A DNA stretch of 64,000 bases from Vitrella brassicaformis CCMP3155 (GCA_001179505.1 CDMY01000553.1:1-64000); one strand, 5' to 3'. Counted from the first letter of the stretch, positions 2,690-18,259 are shown. Translations and numbers: made by a program. The notes: generated by a model from the sequence alone, not told the origin.

Positions 2690-4710
2690 TCATTCAATGT
2701 CCATGTCATTCTCGCCCTGCACCGCGCTCGACAACTCTCGGCGAACCTCAGGAGTGATCTGACAGACAACAGGCATCGTGCAACACTCCAACGACGACAC
2801 TTTCAATGATGTCATCTTCACTCGCCGGACCTGATAGTGTGTGTGTGCCCGCATCACTTGCTTGAGCTTCTCACGGTGGTGGTCCTCCAACTCACCTGTC
2901 GCACACAGAGCCAACACTTCCACACACACACACACACACTCTCACACAGTTTGGCTTCTCCCATGTTTGTCGTAGCTCACATTTGTATCTCTGCGCGAAG
3001 ACGAGAAGCGATCTGTGCCACAGCACGGGGAGGGTGCGAGTGTCGCCGACGAAGGAATGGAAGTGGTCCACCACCTCATCCAGCGCCTTGTAGGGCAGGG
3101 CGTACTTCTTGTTGAGCAGCACCGTGATGAAATAGCTCGTCGTGCCGTACCTGACACAACACGCACACACACGCAAAAAAGCCATCCATCAGTCCCTATG
3201 CGTCAAATGAACTGCCTACCATGGCCTCATGCGGCACAAGAGTGTGAGGGCAGCGGCAGAGTGGATGACGGGCATCGTCACCTTGGCCAAAATGCTCCCA
3301 ACTATCACCGCCTCGCGAAGTGTGCAGTTCTACACCACCGAGTAAACAGACATAAAGGATGGTGTGACTGGGTGGCCGGCGCCTGTGCCACTTGCTTTGC
3401 CGGCGCTTGTGCTTACGTCCTGTGCGAGCGGCAACAAGATGCCCTTGAACCACGCTGCTGGCTTGAACACAGCCTGCACAACACACAGACACACAGCAAG
3501 CCAGGAATGCGACGAGATTCGCTTATCCCCTTCCCTCTCTGGTACATTTGGCATTTGTGACCTTTTTGAGCGCCTCGTAGTAGTGGAAGTTGAGTCGCCT
3601 GTTGGCCTGTATGTCCTCCCTGACGGCCGGCAGCAGCACCAGGTTGTAGAAGCGCTGGGCCATGGCCGGCGTCATGTTGGAGGCGAAGATCTTGGTGGCG
3701 GCGAACATGGCGCTGGGCGACCAGTTGACGGGGTCCGTCAGGTAGATGAACTCCTCCCACGCCTTGAGACGAGGTATCACCTTGAACGCCTTCGGAAGCT
3801 TCCCAGACTTGTACTGGCTCATCCACTTGCCGATCGCCGTGTAGACCTCCACGGCCTTGGGCGGGATGCCAGAGGGGGTCTCCATCAACGCAGCCGCATT
3901 CATCATCGTCCCTTCCGGCGGTGCCGGCCTGTCTTTGTTGGCAGCCGGATCGTCGACAGCATGGCCGAATCGCTCGATCTCCTTCTCCCTGATCTTCTGC
4001 AAGATGAGCTCTGCTAGGGTGCGTGGCTCAGTGTCGGTGTCATCGCGTCCAGGTGCGGGGAGGAACACCTGCATGGCCCGCTCCTCCTCCTCGGTGACGG
4101 CATCGCCCATCACGTAGCCGTCCGCATCGCGGGCCACCGATGCCGTGTCGTCGAACCTGACCTCACTGGCTCCTTTGATGCGTGGCTGCTGCTTCTCCCT
4201 CTCCTTCTGCTTGAGCTTCTGCAGCGTCTGCTCCAGCCGCCGCACCCGCGCCCTCTTGCCTTTGGACAGGCTCTCCCTGTCGACGCCAGCTGATGCAGCA
4301 GCAGCAGCAGCGGGGGCGTCTTCCTCTTGGTCGCCCGCATCCGCCATGTCCGCCTCGTCGTCGTCCTCATCGACCCATTCATCCTCCCCATCTTGCTCGT
4401 CCTCGTCGTCCTTCTGCTCACGGGCTATCTTGAGGAGCTTGTCCGACAGCTTGACGGGCACATCTTCCTCCTGCTCAGGCGCCTGTCGCTGGTGCCTCTT
4501 GCTGGCCTTGTCGCGGGGCTGGACGCGCAGATGGCGGGTGGACTCGTCCTGGAGAAGGTCCGAGTGGAGGGGATTGTGACGCAGGGACGCATTCACGCGC
4601 TTCTTGTTCTCTGCCTTCGGCCTGACACGCAAGCACGGAAAACCATCAAAATCATGAGTTTCTTCATGCGGATCCTCCCTCTACATCTGTTCCACCTGCT
4701 GTGCTTACAT
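2690..4710 (-). CDS. BYSL: Bystin (Enp1), 40S biogenesis factor
   Basis: Exons encode [80 protein letters not shown] and LPVLWHRSLLVFAQRYK, ending ITPEVRRELSS...DIE*. Start codon AT|G is split by intron 4622-4708. Confidence 0.95.
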
Positions 4711-4787
4711 TGTCAGAGCAGTTCGACCTTTCTGTTTCGCAGCACCCTAGGCCACTTGCGAGCTTTGGGCATCCGTGGGTGAATTGG

Positions 4788-7364
4788 ATGATGTTTTCGA
4801 GTGTATTCAAGCCGTTGGCGTTCGAACTCCCAGTGCTGCGGGAGCTGCAGAACAGCCATCTGAAGCTCTTGCAGGATGCCGTGCTGCTGTTGAGCTACAT
4901 CCTGCTGTGGATTTTGTCGCTATGTCTGTTGTGGGTGCTGCCGATACCACGCTACCCCACTGTGGAGGACCGTGTGGAGTTGGCCTACTACGAGGTGGCC
5001 TGCTGGGTGCTCGGCACTGTCCTCTTTGTCGAGGTGCGGACCACTCACACACGCAGTGACACGGCACAGACACACACGGCGGGACGATATCTTATCTGCT
5101 TCTTTGGATGTGTGTGTGTCAGTTCTTTCCGATGTTGTTTTCGGTGTTGAATCTGCTCAAGTTTAGGGGTCACCGTCACCAGCACTTCAAGCTCAAGGTG
5201 TCGCTCATCATGTGCACCGTCGAGGGAGTCATCCTGTGCTCCTACATCCTACTCTCGAGGGACCTACTGCCCGTCCACATCGACCCAGTGACTGGTAGAG
5301 AAGGCACACTAGTCAGGCAGTGTGGCTGATTGAGAGAACGGATGGCTGGTTACTGATTCATTCTCTGTCTGCTGTCGTGTTTGTGTGTCGTGTTTGTCGA
5401 TCAGGTCGGGCGGTGTACAGCGCTCGTTTTATGGAGTGGACTGTGGCTGCCCCGATGCTGGTGTATCTGTCCGGCCGTTATGTGTTTGAGGTGCCCATGC
5501 GGCACGTCCTGCCCGCCATGATCATCACTGGAATGTACATGCAGGCGGGGCTCTGGTAAGAAAGAAAACACACACAGAGAAGCGCATTTGCGTAAGCTGA
5601 GCTGAGCTCCTCATACTCGTGTGTTGTGTTACAGGTCGGCTGTGAGCAGCCACTGGTTGCTTCGGTGGGGTTTGGAGGCTCTTAGCTACATTGGCTACTT
5701 CGCCGCCTCGTGGCTAATGCTCCAGTTTCTCAGATACCAGCACACGGGCGACACATACACCTACACACGGGCTAGGCGACCGAATGCCCTCCACCCATCA
5801 TCGCCCTCCAGCTCTTCAAGGCGGCCGTCGGACATGTCGTCATCCACAGAGCTGCGTCAGAGGCGGCCCAGGACCGACAGCAGCCAGAGTGCTGAGCGGG
5901 ACGCCCCTCCAGATGGGCTGCAGGAGCCGGTGGTGACTCATTATCCTGACGTCCGTCGGCCGCAAATGCGGGCGTGGCAGCAGGTCATGTTTGGGTGGAC
6001 GCTGCTGGCTGGTGGGCTGGGCATCATCTCGCCCACCACGGGGGCCATGGTGGCCGACATGAACGGACAGACCGCCGAACGAACAACTATCGGCGCAGAC
6101 GGACGATCGGGTAAGAAAGGAAAGCACAGAAGACCCTGTCTGTCCCAATGCCAGCATATATACTCACGTGTAACGTTTGATGTGTGGTTTCTTGTCTGCA
6201 GCCCCTGTACGTCGCTTTCTATTGTATTTTAACGTGATTTGGTGGGGGCTATACGGCGTGTGGTTCCACCTGGCCCACGTGGGTGCTCTGCCCGGCTGGG
6301 CGGAGCAGCTGGCGTACACCTTCATGGACAGTGGCGCCAAGACGATGCTGACCATCTGCCTCATCTCACTGCGGAGCTACGAATTCGAAGTCGCCATCAC
6401 CCAGGCCAGACAAGAGGTGTCGAAAGACAGACACAACAGACATCCACATGCGCGTCAACGCGAGGTGTGGTGTTTCTGTGTTCGTGCGTCATTTTAGGCT
6501 GAGCGCAACAGAGTCGAGTACGAATTCGATAGGCGGCTGCAGCTGCTCAAGGTCCAGCTGCGGCACGAGATCATCTCGAGAACACTCCTACAATACGAGG
6601 AGCGAGAGCGACTCGCAGCCGAGAGAGCAGCCGCCGAGGCTGCACAGCAACAGCCAGCCATCCAGCCCCCTTCCAGCCAGGCGATACCAGCCGCACCGAC
6701 CGCCTCCCGCTCTTGCTGCCAGGAGGAGGGCGGCGGTGTCTGGACGCCCGCCACAGTGCCCGTGTCGGTTCGTGATGTCCCACAATTGGCTGGCCGGCCG
6801 TCGCTGAGGCGTCTGCTGGAAGAGGGGATTGATCCTGTTCCCGCCCTCCAGGGCCACTGGTACAGCTTGGAGGGCAATGAGGGCCAGACGACGGACAAAC
6901 CAGACCCCCCGCAGGAAGGGCCGGCTCATGGCCCACCTCCCCAGCACTCTGCGCCCGCACCACTGTCTCGCTTAGAGGTCAAGCGTCGCTCGCTCAGTGA
7001 CCCCGGCCTCTCAGCCGTCCTCGCTGGTGGCCTTCCTCGCTCCCCCCTCCCCACAGAGATTGCGACCATGCCGAGTCCGGTCATCAGTGCCTGTGCCCCT
7101 CCCGAGCTGCCGTCCGACATCCCTCCAAGTATGTCATCGAGCAATAATGGTGGGCGGTGGCGGCACTACAGCCGTGGGATGGACGAGGCCGAGTTGTCTG
7201 ATGACGAGGAAGATGGGGAGAGCGATGGCGACGAGGGTTTGGATTGGATGGACGATTGTCACCTTCAGGAGGAGATAGAGGTGGAGTGGCTCACAGCCAC
7301 GCCAAACGCATCACCGTGCGGCCTCCCAGGAAAGGCGGCGGGAGGGGCACTAACTACTAACTAG
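4788..7364 (+). CDS. Microbial (type-1) rhodopsin with an extra N-terminal helix, long E-F loop and C-terminal coiled coil; 708 aa
   Basis: Exons 4788-5033, 5123-5294, 5405-5555, 5635-6110, 6202-6416 and 6498-7364 join in frame (2127 nt). Helix C motif ARFMEWTVAAP and helix G motif YTFMDSGAK (Lys codon 6339-6341). Eight hydrophobic segments aside from the loop insertion. Confidence 0.85.
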
Positions 7365-8743
7365 CAAGGGGCTGACGAGAGGCCATGCGGTCGTGATGAG
7401 TTTTGAGTGGATGACCATGTGTGCGGTCGTGCACACACTGGGTGAACTGACATGGGGAGGGAGGATCAATTATCTCTGAGTGTGTGTGTGTGTGTGTCGC
7501 TGCTGTGTGTCATGGATGTTGGCCGTGGCTCTTTTTCATCCATGATGAGGGGCTCTTTTTCCCTGCGAGCGCTATAGCCGCGGGCCGACTCTGTGTGTGT
7601 GTGTGTGTGTCTGTGAGATGGGCGAATGGATAACGATAAGGACCAATGCTGCTGCGTGCATAGACATGCATCCATGTCTCGGGAACATAGTTTTTGCGTC
7701 GGCCGCTCTGTTTGCGAGAGCACATACACAGATGGGACCGACATAGCCGGGACAGACGAAGACGCCGCCTCACGGTTGGCTGGCTGGCTGGCTGGCTGTC
7801 ACAGCGCACTTGCTGCGGTTTAAATGGAATGACTCACTCACTACTGCGAAGAGGGGAGAAGACATTCATAGCTGTGATGATGGCATTAGCCACGTGCCTG
7901 TCAACTTGCTGCCCGCCCGCCTGCCTTGCTTCTATCTACCTCTCTATCTGTCTTGGGGATGCGTGGCTGTCGTGTGGTGAGTTGCTGCTCTGTTGTGCTG
8001 ATTGTTGTTGTGGGCTCACTCCCCGGAGCATGAGCGACACACTAATGGGATGAGACGATGGGGTAACGGATTGGCTGACTCCGCTCACTGATCCCGATTC
8101 TGTACAGCGGTGTCGCTTGTTCCCGCTGTTCTCTCCCCCTCGCGCCTCTCGTTGTGCCCTTCCACACATGAAGGTCTACCGCACTCATCAGCTACGGTTG
8201 AGTTCGGCAGTTCGCCATGTGTTGGCGAGCTGACGGGGGGCAGAGGCGGGGAACACAGCTTATACCAGGGGACATCACGTGACTGATGGTCCAACTGACT
8301 GTTGTGCGATGCGATGCTCATCCTTGCTTTGGGCCGTTCATCTGGTGGCCGTGTGAGGGTGCGTCACGCCACATGTCTGACTGTCTGTCTGTCTTTTTCA
8401 TCACCCCTATTGGGAGACATCCGTCCCCGACCCACTCGTCCATGTGCATGGGGGAAGATTGAGATGCGTGCAGTGCCTGTGCGTGAGGTGCCTGCCTGCT
8501 GATGAGAGGGAGAATTTCTGGTCAGTGCGTGGTGGGAGTAGAGAGTCACTACTTGTCGTGTGTGGTGATGACATTCATCTGTCGTGTGCCGTACTCTGCT
8601 TTGCGGCGCCAAGCTTCACGTCACAAGACGACGTTGAAGGTCCAAAGCACTTTCGGTGAGAGCATAAACAGTCGTATGTATCACATCACAAGTCACGAAG
8701 GCGCATCCCCCATCCCCTCCACCGCAGAGCCGCCTACAGCTGC

Positions 8744-9203
8744 TCAGTCGTCACCCTTCCCTGATGCATCCATACACAGGCAGCACCTCGCCGGCAAGTG
8801 TGGCAAAGGAAGGCCCTCTATGTCCCGTGTGTGATGTGAGAGTGTGTGGTCAGCGCACCTTCCGCCTTTTGTAGCATCCCCTTCTTCGCAAACCGCTGAT
8901 TGCGAAGGAACTTGGGACACATCTGACACAGCGCATGACAACACCAGTGAGTGAGGCAACAGCGACTGTAGGCCGAGTTGAAACCGGATCTCTCCTGTCG
9001 TGGGGTGTCGTGTGTTTGTGCGTGCCTCACCCCCTTTGTGGACATCTTCTTTTGGCGCTTGGCCTTGTGGATGCCGTTCTTGTGATCTTTCTTGTTCTGA
9101 TGAGCGGCACGCGCGGGCACAAAACGAGATGGTGGCAGATTCCTCTCGGATCTCGCTTTTTTCTCACCTGATTATGGTTGGTGTGGTTCTTTGACTTCGC
9201 CAT
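8744..9203 (-). CDS. RPL29: 60S ribosomal protein L29 (eL29)
   Basis: Exons: MAKSKNHTNHNQ / NKKDHKNGIHKAKRQKKMSTKG / MCPKFLRNQRFAKKG.... The last micro-exon (GKGDD*) is tentative. Confidence 0.95.
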
Positions 9204-9263
9204 GGCTGCTACGGCGAGGGAGGAGCCACTTCGTGAATTGCGAGCTGAAACCCCAAATCTTGT

Positions 9264-12914: not shown

Positions 12915-15366
12915 TCGTGCGCCGTCGAGCGAAGCGCCACCCCCAGCTGCCAAGGAGGAGGTGCCGCCCGTGCAGCCCATCGCCGTCTCGCGGATGCCCT
13001 CACTGCTCATGGCGGTCAGTCAGCCAGCACATTTGTGTGCCCTCTCTCTCTTTGATTGCAATGGATGGATGGATGGATGGATCATTGTGTGTCGGACTGA
13101 CTCCATTGGTTGGTTGCTTGCTTGATTGCAGGTGTACATATTCTCGGCTGTGTGTTTCATCGCGGCCCTGTACGGCCTCAGTCACCCCTCCACGGCCATG
13201 CACGGCAACATCGTCGGCATGGTCGGCATGGCGGCCGCAATCCTCGTCACCTTCACCGAGATCGGCTTCGGCGGCCAATACGTCCTCTTCTTCCTCCTGG
13301 CCCTGCCTGGCTTCGCGGGAGGCGTCTTGCTCTCCAGGCGCACACAGATGACCCAGACGCCACAGCTCATTGCCGGACTGCACGCCACCGTCGGCCTCGC
13401 GGCCATGCTCGTGGCCTTCGGCAACCTCCTCGGACCTGAACTCGACATCAAGACAGAACTCCTCGCGTAAGCATCGATTGGTGTCTGTCTGTGTTGGAAT
13501 TCCTTTCTCTCTGTCCGTCTGTCTGTCAGTCACAAGTTGGAGACCTACATTGGCGAGTTCATCGCGGCCGTGACGTTCGCTGGCAGTGTGGTGGCTTGCG
13601 GGAAGCTGACGGACCTGCTGCCCTCGGCCCCTCTGTCCTTCGGGCGGACAGCATTCCGCCACGCCACCAACGCCCTGATGCTGCTGCTCATCGCCGGGCT
13701 GGGCGTGGCCTTTGCGACGTCGGTGGACTTCGAGGTCAACCTGATGACGCTGGTGCTGAATGCGGTCTTCTCGGTCGTGTTTGGGTTTCTGCTGGTCATG
13801 GGCATCGGAGCGGCCGACATGCCTGTGGTCATCTCCATGCTCAACTCATACAGCGGATTCGCAATCGCCGCACTCGGATGGTGAGTTGGTAACACACACA
13901 AAGACACAAAGACACAGAGAGGGAGGAGGGAGGGGGGGAGAGATACATGTGCACATGTCGACAGACATCAGAAATGTGCGTGGTGTGGTGTGGTGTGTGG
14001 GTAACAAACAGGATGCTGGACAACAATCTGCTGATCATCACTGGGGCACTTATCGGTTCGTCCGGCGCCATCCTCTCATACGTCATGTGCAAAAACATGA
14101 ACCGGTCGGTCAGTGTGTGGCCACTCTGACCACCACCCCACCCCACACACATACAACACACATCTCTGTATGTCTGTGTGCATGTCTGTGTGTGTGTGTG
14201 TGCAGTTCGTTCATCAGTGTGATCGTGGGCGGCTTCGGTGCGGAGGGCGGAGCGGCCGACGTGGCGGCAGAGGGGATGGTGCTCGAGACGACAGCCAACG
14301 AGGTGGCCGAATTGCTCGTCGCCGCCGACGCCAAGCGCATCGTGATCGTGCCGGACTACGGAATGGCGGCCGCACGCGCAGCAGCCACCGTCGGAGAGGT
14401 CAGTCAGTGTGCAGTGCACACCACGCCACACACATGAGACAGACGCCCGCCATCCATCCATCCATCCATCTGTGTGTGTGATGTAGGTGTACGAGCTGTT
14501 GACTGCGCACGGCCTGGAGGTGTTGTTCGGCATCCATCCAGTGGCGGGCCGCATGCCGGGACAGATGAACGTGATACTGGCCGAGGCCGGCGTGCCCTAC
14601 GAGGCCGTCAAGGAGATAGACGACATCAACGCCATACTCGCTGACACGCAAAACCCCGTCGACATCGCTCTCGGTCAGCATGACCACACACACACACACA
14701 CACATCTGCTCGTGTATGTCTCTCTCTTTCTCTCTCTCCGTCTCTCTGTGCCTCGGCAGTGATTGGTGCCAACGACACGGTGAATCCGTCGGCCAAGGAG
14801 GCGGCGGGTCCCCTCGCCGGCATGCCCATCATCGACGTCCTCGAAGCCAAACGAGTCGTCGTCTTCAAACGCGGCGGCACAGGTGTGTGCGGCAAGGCAA
14901 CATAACAGCCCTCGTGCTTGTGCTGTCAGTCAGTGTGTGTCATTCATTGATGTGTGTGTGTGTGTGTCAGGAATGGGTTACGCGCGTGTGGACAATCCGC
15001 TCTTCACCCACCGCAAGACGCGCATTCTCTTCGGCAACGCCAAGGACACGCTGACCGACGTGCTGGCGACACTGCAGCAGCGGGCCCGGCTCGAGGGCGA
15101 GATGAGGCGCCACCCGGCCGAGACCTTCGTCGCACGACTCGAGGACGCCCGACGACAGGAGGCCGATGAGGACCAGAGGGAGCAGCAGGACCAGATGCCC
15201 ACACCAGCAAAGACACTCGGCGTCGTCAGAGAGACCACCGGCAACCTCATCGCTGTCGGTACGTGTGTCACTAAACAGAGAGAGAGGGAGACGGAGCCGT
15301 CGATGTGTGTGTGTGTGTGTGTTTAGTGCCCAAGACAGTGCCCAAGCTGCGTCGGATGGGCTTCGC
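12915..15366 (+). CDS. NNT: NAD(P) transhydrogenase segment B (beta dII, dIII, linker, start of alpha dI), bounded by gaps
   Basis: Exons nearly identical to copy A but in the opposite orientation. Continues through [19 protein letters not shown] and [13 protein letters not shown]. Confidence 0.9.
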
Positions 15367-15666
15367 NNNNNNNNNNNNNNNNNNNNNNNNNNNNNNNNNN
15401 NNNNNNNNNNNNNNNNNNNNNNNNNNNNNNNNNNNNNNNNNNNNNNNNNNNNNNNNNNNNNNNNNNNNNNNNNNNNNNNNNNNNNNNNNNNNNNNNNNNN
15501 NNNNNNNNNNNNNNNNNNNNNNNNNNNNNNNNNNNNNNNNNNNNNNNNNNNNNNNNNNNNNNNNNNNNNNNNNNNNNNNNNNNNNNNNNNNNNNNNNNNN
15601 NNNNNNNNNNNNNNNNNNNNNNNNNNNNNNNNNNNNNNNNNNNNNNNNNNNNNNNNNNNNNNNNNN
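15367..15666. other. Scaffold gap (300 N)
   Basis: N run. Confidence 1.
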
Positions 15667-15715
15667 GCATCCATCCATCTGTGTGTGTCCATTTTTCCAT
15701 CGATTTGTGATGTAG

Positions 15716-18259
15716 GTGTACGAGCTGTTGACTGCGCACGGCCTGGAGGTGTTGTTCGGCATCCACCCAGTGGCGGGCCGCATGCCGGGACAGATGAACG
15801 TGATACTGGCCGAGGCCGGCGTGCCCTACGAGGCCGTCAAGGAGATAGACGACATCAACGCCATACTCGCTGATTCACAAAACCCCGTCGACATCGCTCT
15901 CGGTCAGTCAGCGCGACCACACACACACACACATACACACACACATACACATCTGCTCGTGTATGTCTCTCTCTCTCTCTCTCTGTGCCTCGGCAGTGAT
16001 TGGTGCCAACGACACGGTGAATCCGTCGGCCAAGGAGGCGGCGGGTCCCCTCGCCGGCATGCCCATCATCGACGTCCTCGAAGCCAAACGAGTCGTCGTC
16101 TTCAAACGCGGCGGCACAGGTGTGTGCGGCAAGGCAACGTAACAGCCCTCGTGCTTGTGCTGTCAGTGTGTGTCATTCATGGATGTGTGTGTGTTGTGTG
16201 TGTGTCAGGAATGGGTTACGCGCGTGTGGACAATCCGCTCTTCACCCACCGCAAGACGCGCATGCTCTTCCGCAACGCCAAGGACACGCTGACCGACGTG
16301 CTGGCGACACTGCAGCAGCGGGCCCGGCTCGAGGGCGAGATGAGGCGCCACCCGGCCGAGACCTTCATCGCACGACTCGAGGACGCCCGACGACAGGAGG
16401 CCGATGAGGACCAGAGGGAGCAGCAGGACCAGATGCCCACACCAGCAAAGACACTCGGCGTCGTCAGAGAGACCACCGGCAACCTCATCGCTGTCGGTAC
16501 GTGTGTCACTAAACAGAGAGAGAGGGAGACGGAGCCGTCGATGTGTGTGTGTGTGTCCAGTGCCCAAGACAGTGCCCAAGCTGCGTCGGATGGGCTTCGC
16601 TGTGCTGGTCGAGACTGGTGCCGGTGAGTCGGCTGGCTACGCTGACGCCGACTTCACGCGATGGGGGGCTGAGGTCGTGGCGACCAAGCAGCAGACCATC
16701 CAAAGGGCTGACATCGTCATCAAGGTACCTACCGACACACATAAACACACACGACACACTACACAACATTCACACGGCTGTGTTGTCTGTGTGCAGGTTG
16801 GGCAGCACCGCCGATGAGGTGCAGCAGATGGGCTCGCCTGAGAACGGACAGAAGGTGAGTGAGCTGCCAGCGACAGGAAGACGACCGCCCCATCCATCCA
16901 CTGGTTGCTGTGTGTGTTTGTGTTGTGTGCAGGTGTTGGTGTGTATGATGAGCGCCGCCCGCAATGGCGACCTGCTGCAGTCCCTCGCCTCCCGCCAGAT
17001 CACATGCATCGCTGTCGACGAAGTGCCGCGCACCACTGCCGCCCAGTCGATGGACGTCCGCTCGGCTTTGTCGTCGCTCGCCGGCTATCGAGCCGTCCTC
17101 GAGGGCTTCAGTGCGCTCGGGGCGCTGAGCGGCACGTCGACCTTCGCTGTGGGCCGAGTGGACATGGCCAAGGTGCTCGTCATCGGCACGGGCGTGGCGG
17201 GACTCCAGGCCATCTCAACAGCAAAACGTACACACACGCATCAAACATCAATGGCACGCCGTTCTTCATTCCTCTCTGTCTGTACGTGTGTGTGTGTGTG
17301 TCATTCATTCGTTAAACAGTGTTGCAGGCTGACGTGGATGCGACTGACATCCGCCCCGACACCAAGGAGCAGGTCGAGTCGGTCGGCGGCAAGTTCATCG
17401 ACCCAGCTGCCCTCGCCCCCACACCGGCAGCCGCCGCAGCGGGAGTGGAGGCACCGACTGGCTACGCAACTGAGACCCCAGAGGAGCTGGCGCGGGCGCA
17501 GAAGGCCATGCTCGAGCGTGTGCTGCCGTCGATGGATCTGGTCATCTGCTCGGCCGCCAGGAAGGACAGCGCCCCTCTCATTCTCGACGCAGCACTGGTC
17601 AGTCAGCCCCATGCTTATGACAACAAGCAAAGCAAAGAGGAGGGGGAGGCAAGTGATGTGATGTGTGCACGTGTGTGTGTCCTTGCTTGCCTTGCATCAG
17701 GTGCGTGTGATGGGTCGCGGCAAGTGCATCGTCGACCTGACCACGAACTTCCCCCGCAGCAACTGCGAACTCGCCAGAAACGGTAAGTCGGTCACACTCA
17801 CACGGCCCAGCCGACCAAGAGAGGCCAACCAGCCACCAAGAGCGATGTCTGTCTGTCTGTCTGTGTGTGTCTGCCTGTGTGTGCAGATGAGTTGGTGGTT
17901 GACGGTGCATCTCGTGTCAAGGTTGTGGGCCTCAGCTCGCCGTCCGACCGCATGCCCGGCCAGGCCTCCCTCCTGTACTCGTCATGCGTCGCCAACCTCC
18001 TCAAGGCAAGCAGCGGGCTGCAGCCACCCGACACGACAAACACACACAGACAGACAGACAGACATGAGTGTGTGTGTGTCGATATATCTATGGGTCAGAG
18101 TGCGGGTGGCGCTGAGGGCTTCAGTGTGCAGGCGGATGCCGACGTCCGTGCCATGCTTGTCACGCATGAGGGGGCCGTCGTGTACACGGCCGAGCAGCCG
18201 CCCTCTCCCACAGCCATCTACGAGGGCGTCGAGGTAGCCGTCGAGGTGCCCGCCGAGCC
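15716..18259 (+). pseudogene. NNT: NAD(P) transhydrogenase segment C (dIII to alpha dI), frameshifted
   Basis: Repeats exons of segments B and D. The exon at 16797 is 2 nt shorter than in D, giving TGA at 16815-16817. Confidence 0.7.

What the first reader, a model, noticed from the sequence alone, without database searches (positions are those of the whole stretch)
4788..7364. Orphan 8-helix microbial rhodopsin with intact retinal pocket and no effector domain
Seen: an extra N-terminal helix (AVLLLSYILLWILSLCLLWVL) before seven rhodopsin-like helices. Helix C R-F-M-E-W-T-V-A-A-P places Glu, Ala and Leu at the bacteriorhodopsin 85/89/96 positions; helix G is D-S-G-A-K. Known: the 8-TM layout with a Glu counterion is typical of enzyme rhodopsins (HKR, Rh-GC, Rh-PDE); bestrhodopsins also carry the extra helix. 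Here the C-terminus is only a coiled coil plus ~230 aa of low-complexity sequence. Inference: a non-pumping photoreceptor that signals through partner proteins, possibly an undescribed class of alveolate light sensor.
Basis: partly seen in the sequence, partly recalled or inferred. Interest (0 to 1): 0.9.

Follow-up and report, generated by a model that had tools for sequence, protein, structure and literature searches.

The report
Pore-less bestrhodopsin-like light sensor gene
This alga (Vitrella brassicaformis) has an expressed gene for a light-sensor protein whose closest studied relatives are the sensor modules of light-controlled "bestrhodopsin" ion channels, but it has no channel or enzyme part, so how it passes on its signal is unknown.

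Summary
A six-exon gene (4788-7364, +) encodes the 708-aa protein CEM22193.1 / A0A0G4G281 of Vitrella brassicaformis. Public RNA contigs confirm all five introns, and the transcript is not spliced to anything downstream. The protein passes Pfam's Bac_rhodopsin threshold. Its model has eight membrane helices and superposes on solved rhodopsins (Z 17-19, rmsd 2.4 A). It keeps Arg147, Glu150, Asp391 and the retinal lysine Lys395.

It is not an orphan. Its closest solved relative by far is the rhodopsin module of bestrhodopsin 7PL9 (E 2e-40; clade profile 3e-67; next best 8e-5). It belongs to a small chrompodellid clade with short stand-alone relatives in Vitrella (352 aa), Chromera (354 aa) and the non-photosynthetic predator Alphamonas (377 aa). 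None has a bestrophin domain.

Unlike bestrhodopsins, the clade has Ala, not Asp, at the third counterion site. The window protein alone adds a 123-aa insert in the cytoplasmic E-F loop and a 237-aa disordered acidic tail.

Most likely it is a retinal-binding sensor that pairs up through the conserved helix after TM7 and signals through partner proteins. That part is inference.

This scan had already noted related pore-less 8-TM rhodopsins elsewhere in this genome (s1-235819). I class it as a new variant of a known kind, of moderate interest.

The parts
4788..5033 (+). Exon 1 (aa 1-82): first in-frame ATG, TM0 (aa 21-50, nt 4848-4937) and the start of helix A
   Evidence: Model. The joint 5033/5123 is seen in RNA contigs. 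Transcript contigs L001/L002 begin at 4779/4778. Helices.
5123..5294 (+). Exon 2 (aa 83-140): rest of helix A, the positively charged A-B loop, helix B (aa 100-127) and the first strand of the B-C hairpin
5405..5555 (+). Exon 3 (aa 140-190): helix C with R147 (5425-5427), E150 (5434-5436, BR D85 site), A154 (5446-5448, BR T89 site; Asp in bestrhodopsins), P156 and L161 (5467-5469, BR D96 site); most of helix D
   Evidence: Alignments; joints
5635..6110 (+). Exon 4 (aa 190-349): end of helix D, helix E (aa 197-224, with E204 at 5675-5677) and the whole 123-aa E-F loop insert (aa 225-347, nt 5738-6106), which includes a hydrophobic stretch at aa 303-330 (5972-6055)
   Evidence: RNA contigs and transcript L001 cover 5634-6110 without a break, so the insert is coding sequence and not an intron. 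It is absent from all relatives and has pLDDT below 50.
6202..6416 (+). Exon 5 (aa 349-420): helix F (W363, Y366, G367), helix G with D391 (6327-6329) and the retinal lysine K395 (6339-6341), and the start of the helix after TM7
6498..7364 (+). Exon 6 (aa 421-708 plus stop): continuation of the long helix to aa 471 (nt to 6650), then a disordered Pro/Ala/Glu/Ser-rich tail (6651-7361) with an RSLSDP motif (6987-7004) and an acidic end (7182-7286); stop codon at 7362-7364
   Evidence: The transcript is unbroken from 6496 to 8762, with no + strand splice after 6497.
5034..5122 (+). Intron 1 (89 nt, GT..AG). The other introns are 5295-5404, 5556-5634, 6111-6201 and 6417-6497.
   Evidence: Joints in RNA runs X1 and X2 that are absent from DNA runs X3 and X4. 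The first three intron positions are shared with the paralogue's gene.

Best explanation
The gene encodes a real, expressed, retinal-binding 8-TM microbial rhodopsin. It belongs to a small chrompodellid clade whose nearest characterised relatives are the rhodopsin modules of bestrhodopsins, but it has no bestrophin channel and no enzyme domain.

Shown: the gene structure and its transcription; the rhodopsin fold with TM0; conservation of R147, E150, D391, K395 and of the W363/Y366 pocket residues; the absence of any recognisable output domain; and the family relationship.

Inferred: light isomerises retinal bound to K395, with E150 and D391 as the counterion pair. With Leu at the proton-donor site and Ala at the BR T89 site, the protein does not pump protons. 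Instead, movement of helices F and G would be passed to the cytoplasmic side.

Three cytoplasmic elements could carry that signal. The first is the amphipathic helix after TM7 (aa 405-471), conserved across the clade, which probably pairs two subunits as in enzyme rhodopsins and in the R1-R2 linker of bestrhodopsin. The second and third are specific to this protein: the 123-aa E-F loop insert and the 237-aa acidic disordered tail, which would serve as docking or phosphorylation surfaces for soluble or membrane partners.

The partner could be another 8-TM paralogue or a separately encoded channel.
For: Gene and transcript.

Rhodopsin membership: Pfam PF01036 above its cut-off. VIA-align gives Z 17-19 and rmsd 2.4 A over about 190 residues against LR, SRII and BR. 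With the better model, Foldseek's top hits are the two solved 8-TM rhodopsins, Rh-PDE and bestrhodopsin, followed by BR at TM 0.76-0.79.

Kinship: 7PL9 at E 2.4e-40 for this protein and 3.4e-67 for the clade profile, against 8e-5 for the next family.

Conserved pocket and helix after TM7: invariant across the four clade members are R147, E150, W151, P156, Y184, W190, W363, Y366, G367, D391, K395, and A417, R418, F430, L434, L437, K438, L441.

No output domain. No bestrophin gene and no second rhodopsin gene in the window.

The charge distribution of the loops fits a cytoplasmic insert and tail: a positive A-B loop and an insert with net charge +3.
Against: No spectrum, retinal binding or signalling has been measured for any member of this clade. 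Foldseek E-values are modest (about 1e-5), and the structural models rest on shallow alignments of 6 and 9 rows.

The insert and tail are found in this protein only and are low in complexity. They could be neutral expansions of the kind common in this lineage rather than signalling surfaces. The heptad pattern of the helix after TM7 is only moderate (50-62% core residues at a/d positions).

A buried Glu (E204) at the site of BR W138, present only in this protein, might disturb the ionone-ring pocket.

RNA coverage is low (word depth about 4-8). The contigs are unstranded, and the 5' end is covered only by the two full-length contigs.
Confidence: 0.55

Rival explanations
1. It is one subunit of a split or hetero-oligomeric photoreceptor. 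It would act in trans on a separately encoded bestrophin or other channel, or pair with another 8-TM paralogue, as NeoR pairs with RGC subunits. This reading overlaps with the best explanation but makes a specific claim about the partner.
For: In the nearest relatives the same module regulates a bestrophin pore through contacts within one complex (7PL9; PMC10962995). Vitrella has at least two further paralogues, the 352-aa P0008 and a 720-aa Bac_rhodopsin gene head-to-head with it. The dimerising helix is conserved. A scan note reports bestrophin genes elsewhere in this genome (s1-248751; not tested here).
Against: There is no bestrophin or rhodopsin neighbour in this 64-kb window. No co-expression or interaction data exist. 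Gene adjacency means little in eukaryotes.
Confidence: 0.2
2. It transports ions by itself, as a light-gated channel or an unusual pump.
For: It has a complete 7-TM rhodopsin core with a Glu/Asp counterion pair, as in channelrhodopsins. Extra membrane-embedded carboxylates are present (E82 conserved in the clade; E116 and E204 only in this protein).
Against: No channelrhodopsin or pump chain in the PDB matches by sequence better than E about 1e-3, whereas bestrhodopsin matches at 1e-40. The proton-donor site is Leu and the T89 site is Ala, so the DTD-type pump motif is absent. In bestrhodopsin the conducting pore is the bestrophin domain, not the rhodopsin (PMC10962995).
Confidence: 0.12
3. 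It is a degenerating or light-blind paralogue. The short 352-aa copy would do the sensing, while this copy, loaded with low-complexity insertions, has lost or changed its function.
For: It has the longest branch in the clade (0.85 against 0.28-0.48). It has a unique 123-aa insert and tail of low complexity. It has Glu at the ionone-ring site where the others have Val.
Against: The reading frame is intact across six exons, and the mRNA is spliced and present in two RNA data sets. All catalytic and pocket residues shared by the clade and by bestrhodopsins are kept, including K395.
Confidence: 0.1

Closest known systems
Bestrhodopsins (rhodopsin or rhodopsin-rhodopsin fused to a bestrophin channel; PDB 7PL9, Phaeocystis antarctica)
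   Same: Both have an 8-TM rhodopsin module with TM0 and clear sequence homology from TM0/TM1 through TM7 and into the helix that follows (E 2e-40 to 3e-67). They share Arg, the Glu counterion, Asp and Lys in helix G, Tyr at the BR M118 site, Gly at the BR P186 site, and Leu at the BR D96 site.
   Different: This protein has no bestrophin domain. It has a single rhodopsin module. The third counterion, Asp at the BR T89 site in bestrhodopsins, is Ala here. Pro is kept at BR P91, where bestrhodopsins have Cys or Thr. Helix G reads D-S-G-A-K rather than D-V-V-M-K. A fully supported long branch separates the two groups. The E-F insert and the long tail are unique to this protein.
Short chrompodellid stand-alone 8-TM rhodopsins: Vitrella CEL91947.1 (352 aa), Chromera A0A0G4GEQ8 (354 aa), Alphamonas edax EP00386_P001128 (377 aa); all uncharacterised
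   Same: They share 40-44% identity, the same helix C and helix G motifs, and the same helix after TM7. The first three intron positions are shared with the Vitrella paralogue's gene.
   Different: They end shortly after the conserved helix and have a short E-F loop. They have Val where this protein has E204.
Enzyme rhodopsins (Rh-PDE, Rh-GC, HKR, NeoR)
   Same: They share the 8-TM layout with a cytoplasmic N-terminus, a Glu counterion and a helical linker after TM7. The Rh-PDE TM domain is the top Foldseek hit.
   Different: This protein has no enzyme domain. Sequence similarity to Rh-PDE is marginal (E 0.03-0.05, helices B-C only).
Haloarchaeal sensory rhodopsins (SRII-HtrII)
   Same: Both would be non-transporting rhodopsins that signal through a separate partner. 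Structural superposition is good (Z 18, rmsd 2.4-2.5 A).
   Different: Sensory rhodopsins have 7 TM helices, an Asp counterion and a dedicated transducer. Sequence similarity is not significant (E 0.4-0.9).

Membership tests
Microbial (type-1) rhodopsins | Seven-helix rhodopsin fold and a sequence match to the family model | tested here: met
   Pfam PF01036 scores 35.3 bits against a cut-off of 24.6. VIA-align Z 17-19 and rmsd 2.4 A. Foldseek TM by target 0.76-0.79 to BR.
Microbial (type-1) rhodopsins | Schiff-base lysine in helix G, with Asp four residues before it and Arg plus a carboxylate in helix C | tested here: met
   K395, D391, R147 and E150 align to BR K216, D212, R82 and D85.
Microbial (type-1) rhodopsins | Covalent retinal binding and a photocycle | not testable with these tools
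   Needs expression and spectroscopy.
Bestrhodopsins | 8-TM rhodopsin module homologous to R1/R2 of bestrhodopsin | tested here: met
   7PL9 matches at E 2.4e-40, with both modules aligned. The clade profile scores 3.4e-67.
Bestrhodopsins | C-terminal fusion to a bestrophin channel domain | tested here: not met
   No Pfam family in residues 425-708, whereas a control bestrhodopsin ORF scores Bestrophin_2 at E 6e-51. tblastn with bestrophin domains finds nothing in the window. The transcript ends without further + strand splicing.
Bestrhodopsins | Counterion triad (Glu, Asp, Asp at BR 85/89/212), as described in PMC12875766 | tested here: not met
   E150 and D391 are present, but the BR 89 site is A154. 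It is Ala in all four clade members and Asp in all bestrhodopsin modules aligned.
Enzyme rhodopsins (HKR, Rh-GC, Rh-PDE) | Fused kinase, cyclase or phosphodiesterase domain | tested here: not met
   No such Pfam domain is found, and the tail is disordered.
Enzyme rhodopsins (HKR, Rh-GC, Rh-PDE) | Extra N-terminal TM0 helix | tested here: met
   The helix at residues 21-50 precedes helix A. The alignment to Rh-PDE 7cj3 starts at model residue 25.
Outward proton pumps (BR-like) | DTD/DTE-type motif at BR 85/89/96 | tested here: not met
   The motif here is E-A-L (E150, A154, L161).
Channelrhodopsins | Sequence membership in a channelrhodopsin family | tested here: not met
   No channelrhodopsin chain appears among the PDB sequence hits at E up to 1 for this protein or up to 10 for P0002. 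Function was not tested.

The most novel reading that the evidence does not exclude
Chrompodellid alveolates, including the non-photosynthetic predator Alphamonas, carry a distinct class of stand-alone sensory rhodopsins built from the bestrhodopsin-type 8-TM module. This module may share the unusual bistable, 11-cis-forming photochemistry of bestrhodopsins. It would signal not through a fused pore but through a dimerising helix and, in this 708-aa member, through large disordered cytoplasmic scaffolds in the E-F loop and C-terminus. That would amount to a microbial-rhodopsin counterpart of loop-and-tail signalling in animal opsins.
Probability: 0.3. Interest if true: 0.75.

Novelty: new variant of a known kind. 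Interest (0 to 1): 0.55.

Why it matters
Bestrhodopsin modules are valued for far-red absorption and an unusual, bistable all-trans/11-cis photochemistry. So far they are known only as parts of giant channel complexes. A naturally free-standing relative would do three things.

- It would provide a small, separable module in which to study that photochemistry.
- It would show what the module did before, or after, it was joined to a pore.
- It would point to an unknown signalling route from a microbial rhodopsin to cytoplasmic partners in the closest photosynthetic relatives of apicomplexan parasites.

The presence of an orthologue in a heterotrophic colpodellid suggests a sensory role, not a photosynthesis-linked one.

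Tried and rejected
- Pfam on single exons found nothing. Only the full-length protein passes the threshold, so the exon-wise negative result was uninformative.
- The three word-indexed protein searches found only the protein itself plus P0008 and P0009.
- The exhaustive search with the 71-aa F-G exon gave 7 hits, three of them spurious repeat proteins.
- The metagenome scan returned only true bestrhodopsins of the Phaeocystis type and no further stand-alone relatives.
- An intron hidden inside exon 4 was rejected as the explanation for the insert, because RNA contigs are unbroken there.
- A downstream effector exon was rejected. The only joints after 6497 are CT..AC introns of a convergent minus-strand gene.
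- A bestrophin gene nearby was rejected by tblastn.
- The weak Opi1 hit in the insert (E 0.005, below the cut-off) was dismissed as low-complexity noise.
- The primary bestrhodopsin paper (Rozenberg et al. 2022) is not in the library. I therefore could not check whether its phylogeny already lists these chrompodellid proteins.
- No paper in the library mentions rhodopsins of Alphamonas or links bestrhodopsins to Alveolata.

Full report
**1. What is in the sequence**

The region 4788-7364 on the + strand holds a six-exon gene: 4788-5033, 5123-5294, 5405-5555, 5635-6110, 6202-6416 and 6498-7364. All five introns are GT..AG and 79-110 nt long.

The spliced product is 708 aa. It is letter-for-letter identical to a database protein found by searching with the 71-aa exon 5 alone (P0001). 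That protein is CEM22193.1 / UniProt A0A0G4G281, an 'unnamed protein product' of Vitrella brassicaformis CCMP3155.

**2.

Contigs of two RNA runs show each of the five introns as a joint, while two DNA runs do not (table 5). Two full-length transcript contigs (L001 from JGI 3300017148 and L002 from SRR646408) carry the whole CDS. They start 9-10 nt before the ATG at 4788, which is the first in-frame ATG after an upstream stop.

Exon 4 is unbroken in RNA, so the unusual 123-residue stretch is translated and is not a missed intron.

Downstream of 6497 the transcript follows the genome without a break to 8762. The only later joints are CT..AC, that is, introns of a convergent minus-strand gene. 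The stop codon at 7362-7364 lies inside that unbroken RNA. The scenario 'spliced to a downstream enzyme domain' is therefore not seen.

**3. Is it a rhodopsin with eight helices?**

Single exons gave no Pfam hit. The full protein passes the Bac_rhodopsin gathering score (35.3 bits against 24.6, E 1e-8).

I made two AlphaFold2 models. The first covered the whole protein with a 6-row alignment. The second covered residues 20-475 with 9 rows and gave mean pLDDT 71.5, with 80-95 in the membrane core. Both give the following elements:

- TM0 at 21-50
- helix A at 65-95
- helix B at 100-127
- a B-C beta hairpin at 133-144
- helix C at 146-166
- helix D at 171-193
- helix E at 197-224
- helix F at 349-374
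- helix G from 380, running on as one helix to 471

VIA-align superposes the core on LR, SRII and BR with Z 17-19 and rmsd 2.4 A over about 190 residues. The alignment to the 8-TM Rh-PDE begins at TM0. With the better model, Foldseek's first hits are the two solved 8-TM rhodopsins, Rh-PDE (7cj3, 7d7q) and bestrhodopsin (7pl9). BR follows at TM 0.76-0.79 by target.

HMMER alignments to archaerhodopsin-3 and Leptosphaeria rhodopsin fix the numbering. The equivalences to BR are:

| This protein | BR site |
|---|---|
| R147 | R82 |
| E150 | D85 |
| A154 | T89 |
| P156 | P91 |
| L161 | D96 |
| Y184 | M118 |
| W363 | W182 |
| Y366 | Y185 |
| G367 | P186 |
| D391 | D212 |
| K395 | K216 |

**4. What it is related to**

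Against all PDB sequences, the best match by far is 7PL9, the rhodopsin-rhodopsin-bestrophin complex of Phaeocystis antarctica. Both of its rhodopsin modules align to the N- and C-terminal halves of the core, on either side of the insert (E 2.4e-40). The next best hits are LR at 0.0035 and Rh-PDE at 0.03.

Searches recovered three close relatives, all short and uncharacterised:

- P0008, Vitrella, 352 aa, 44% identical
- P0002, Chromera velia, 354 aa
- P0009, Alphamonas edax, 377 aa, from a non-photosynthetic colpodellid

A profile of the four scores 3.4e-67 on 7PL9 and only 8e-5 on the next entry.

In a maximum-likelihood tree the four form a fully supported group (100/100). A long branch separates them from the bestrhodopsin modules R1 and R2, which were taken from two loci fetched from metagenomes plus P0006. 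The window protein has the longest terminal branch and sits outside the three short proteins with weak support (80/67). The tree is unrooted, so it cannot say which form is ancestral.

The first three intron positions are shared with the gene of P0008, which supports descent by duplication.

P0008 itself lies head-to-head with a third, more distant 720-aa Bac_rhodopsin gene (26-29% identity). The scan has therefore met this kind of protein before, on other DNA of the same genome.

A fold search of AlphaFold DB clusters also lists 8-TM-like proteins. By their accession ranges (my reading; the organism column is blank) they appear to come from the Chromera/Vitrella proteomes and from dinoflagellates. 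I did not follow these up.

**5. How it differs from bestrhodopsins**

- There is no bestrophin domain. The tail (425-708) and the insert have no Pfam family, whereas a genuine bestrhodopsin ORF (L003) run in the same call scores Bestrophin_2 at 6e-51. tblastn with two bestrophin domains finds nothing in the 64-kb window.
- The 'counterion triad' reported for bestrhodopsins and NeoR (carboxylates at BR 85, 89 and 212; PMC12875766) is incomplete. Position 89 is Ala in all four clade members and Asp in every bestrhodopsin module aligned.
- Pro at BR 91 is kept, where bestrhodopsins have Cys or Thr. Helix G reads D-S-G-A-K rather than D-V-V-M-K.

Features shared with bestrhodopsins and unusual elsewhere are Tyr at the M118 site, Gly at the P186 site and the conserved helix after TM7.

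Colour cannot be predicted safely. [quoted passage not shown]

**6. What is special to this protein**

Two things are special.

The first is a 123-aa insert between helices E and F (aa 225-347). Its first half is Ser/Arg/Pro-rich. Its second half holds a moderately hydrophobic stretch (aa 303-330) that is modelled as helical with low confidence.

The second is a 237-aa tail after the long helix. It is rich in Pro/Ala/Glu/Ser, has net charge -20 and is disordered. It contains one RSLSDP motif, which fits the textbook mode-1 14-3-3 pattern. A single such match can easily arise by chance.

By the standard topology of 8-TM rhodopsins, and by the charge of the loops, both the insert and the tail face the cytoplasm.

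The protein also has Glu at the site of BR W138 (E204), where its relatives have Val. This is a possible colour-tuning or destabilising change. I could not check it in three dimensions, because model coordinates are not returned.

**7. Mechanism**

Shown:

- an intact, expressed rhodopsin module of bestrhodopsin type
- no output domain
- a conserved amphipathic helix after TM7, with a moderate heptad pattern

Inferred:

- Retinal on K395 is isomerised by light.
- E150 and D391 form the counterion pair.
- There is no proton pumping, because the motif is E-A-L.
- The light-driven movement of helices F and G is read out on the cytoplasmic side by the dimerising helix and, in this protein, by the insert and tail through partner proteins.

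I put this at about 0.55. The rivals are:

- a split receptor acting on a separately encoded channel or paired with a paralogue (0.2)
- an ion transporter in its own right (0.12)
- a degenerating, light-blind copy (0.1)

**8. Novelty and score**

The protein is in public databases with an automatic Bac_rhodopsin tag but no name. The searchable literature says nothing about this clade. The primary bestrhodopsin paper could not be read, so prior mention there cannot be excluded.

The protein is best described as a new variant of a known kind: a bestrhodopsin-type module living without its pore, with an altered counterion site and, in this copy, large cytoplasmic additions.

That is of real but moderate interest. 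It gives a concrete and testable entry to how this module signals on its own. The claim of an orphan or a wholly new class does not hold.

Noticed in passing
window 3523-4632 (-): A bystin (Pfam Bystin, E 8e-48) gene lies head-to-head with the rhodopsin gene. The two coding starts are only about 150 nt apart, which suggests a shared bidirectional promoter region.
   Followed up: partly
window 6591-9251: A convergent minus-strand gene has CT..AC introns at 8760-8857, 8923-9030 and 9097-9167, and its product looks like ribosomal protein L29. RNA contigs run without a break from 6591 through the rhodopsin's last exon and 3' UTR into that gene's exons, at about 7-fold higher depth in one run. Either the 3' UTRs overlap in antisense or the unstranded assembly merged two transcripts.
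   Followed up: partly
window 8374-8505: This short stretch has 2-3-fold higher DNA depth. Many joints and loose ends occur at 8374 and 8394 in both DNA runs and RNA runs, which suggests a dispersed repeat inside the 3' UTR region.
   Followed up: no
window 13100-16630: A NAD(P) transhydrogenase beta-like gene has a segment of about 1.2 kb present twice (the ORFs at 14487-15326 and 15716-16627 are near-identical), separated by runs of N. This is either a tandem duplication or an assembly artefact at gaps.
   Followed up: no
L007 4160-6763 (-) and 7001-8816 (+) (CDMY01000033.1): The 352-aa paralogue P0008 sits head-to-head with a 720-aa Bac_rhodopsin gene. That gene's helix C reads R-S-M-E-W-A-C-S-F-P, and it is 26-29% identical to the window protein. 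Like the window protein, it is about twice as long as the core.
   Followed up: partly
AlphaFold DB cluster hits: The best fold matches are unnamed or misnamed proteins: A0A0G4HDQ8, labelled 'TLC domain-containing', and A0A812P7F1, A0A812MYL3 and A0A813KW91. By their accession ranges they appear to come from the Chromera/Vitrella proteomes and from dinoflagellates; the organism column is blank, so this is my reading. This hints at a wider set of 8-TM rhodopsin-like proteins in myzozoan alveolates.
   Followed up: no
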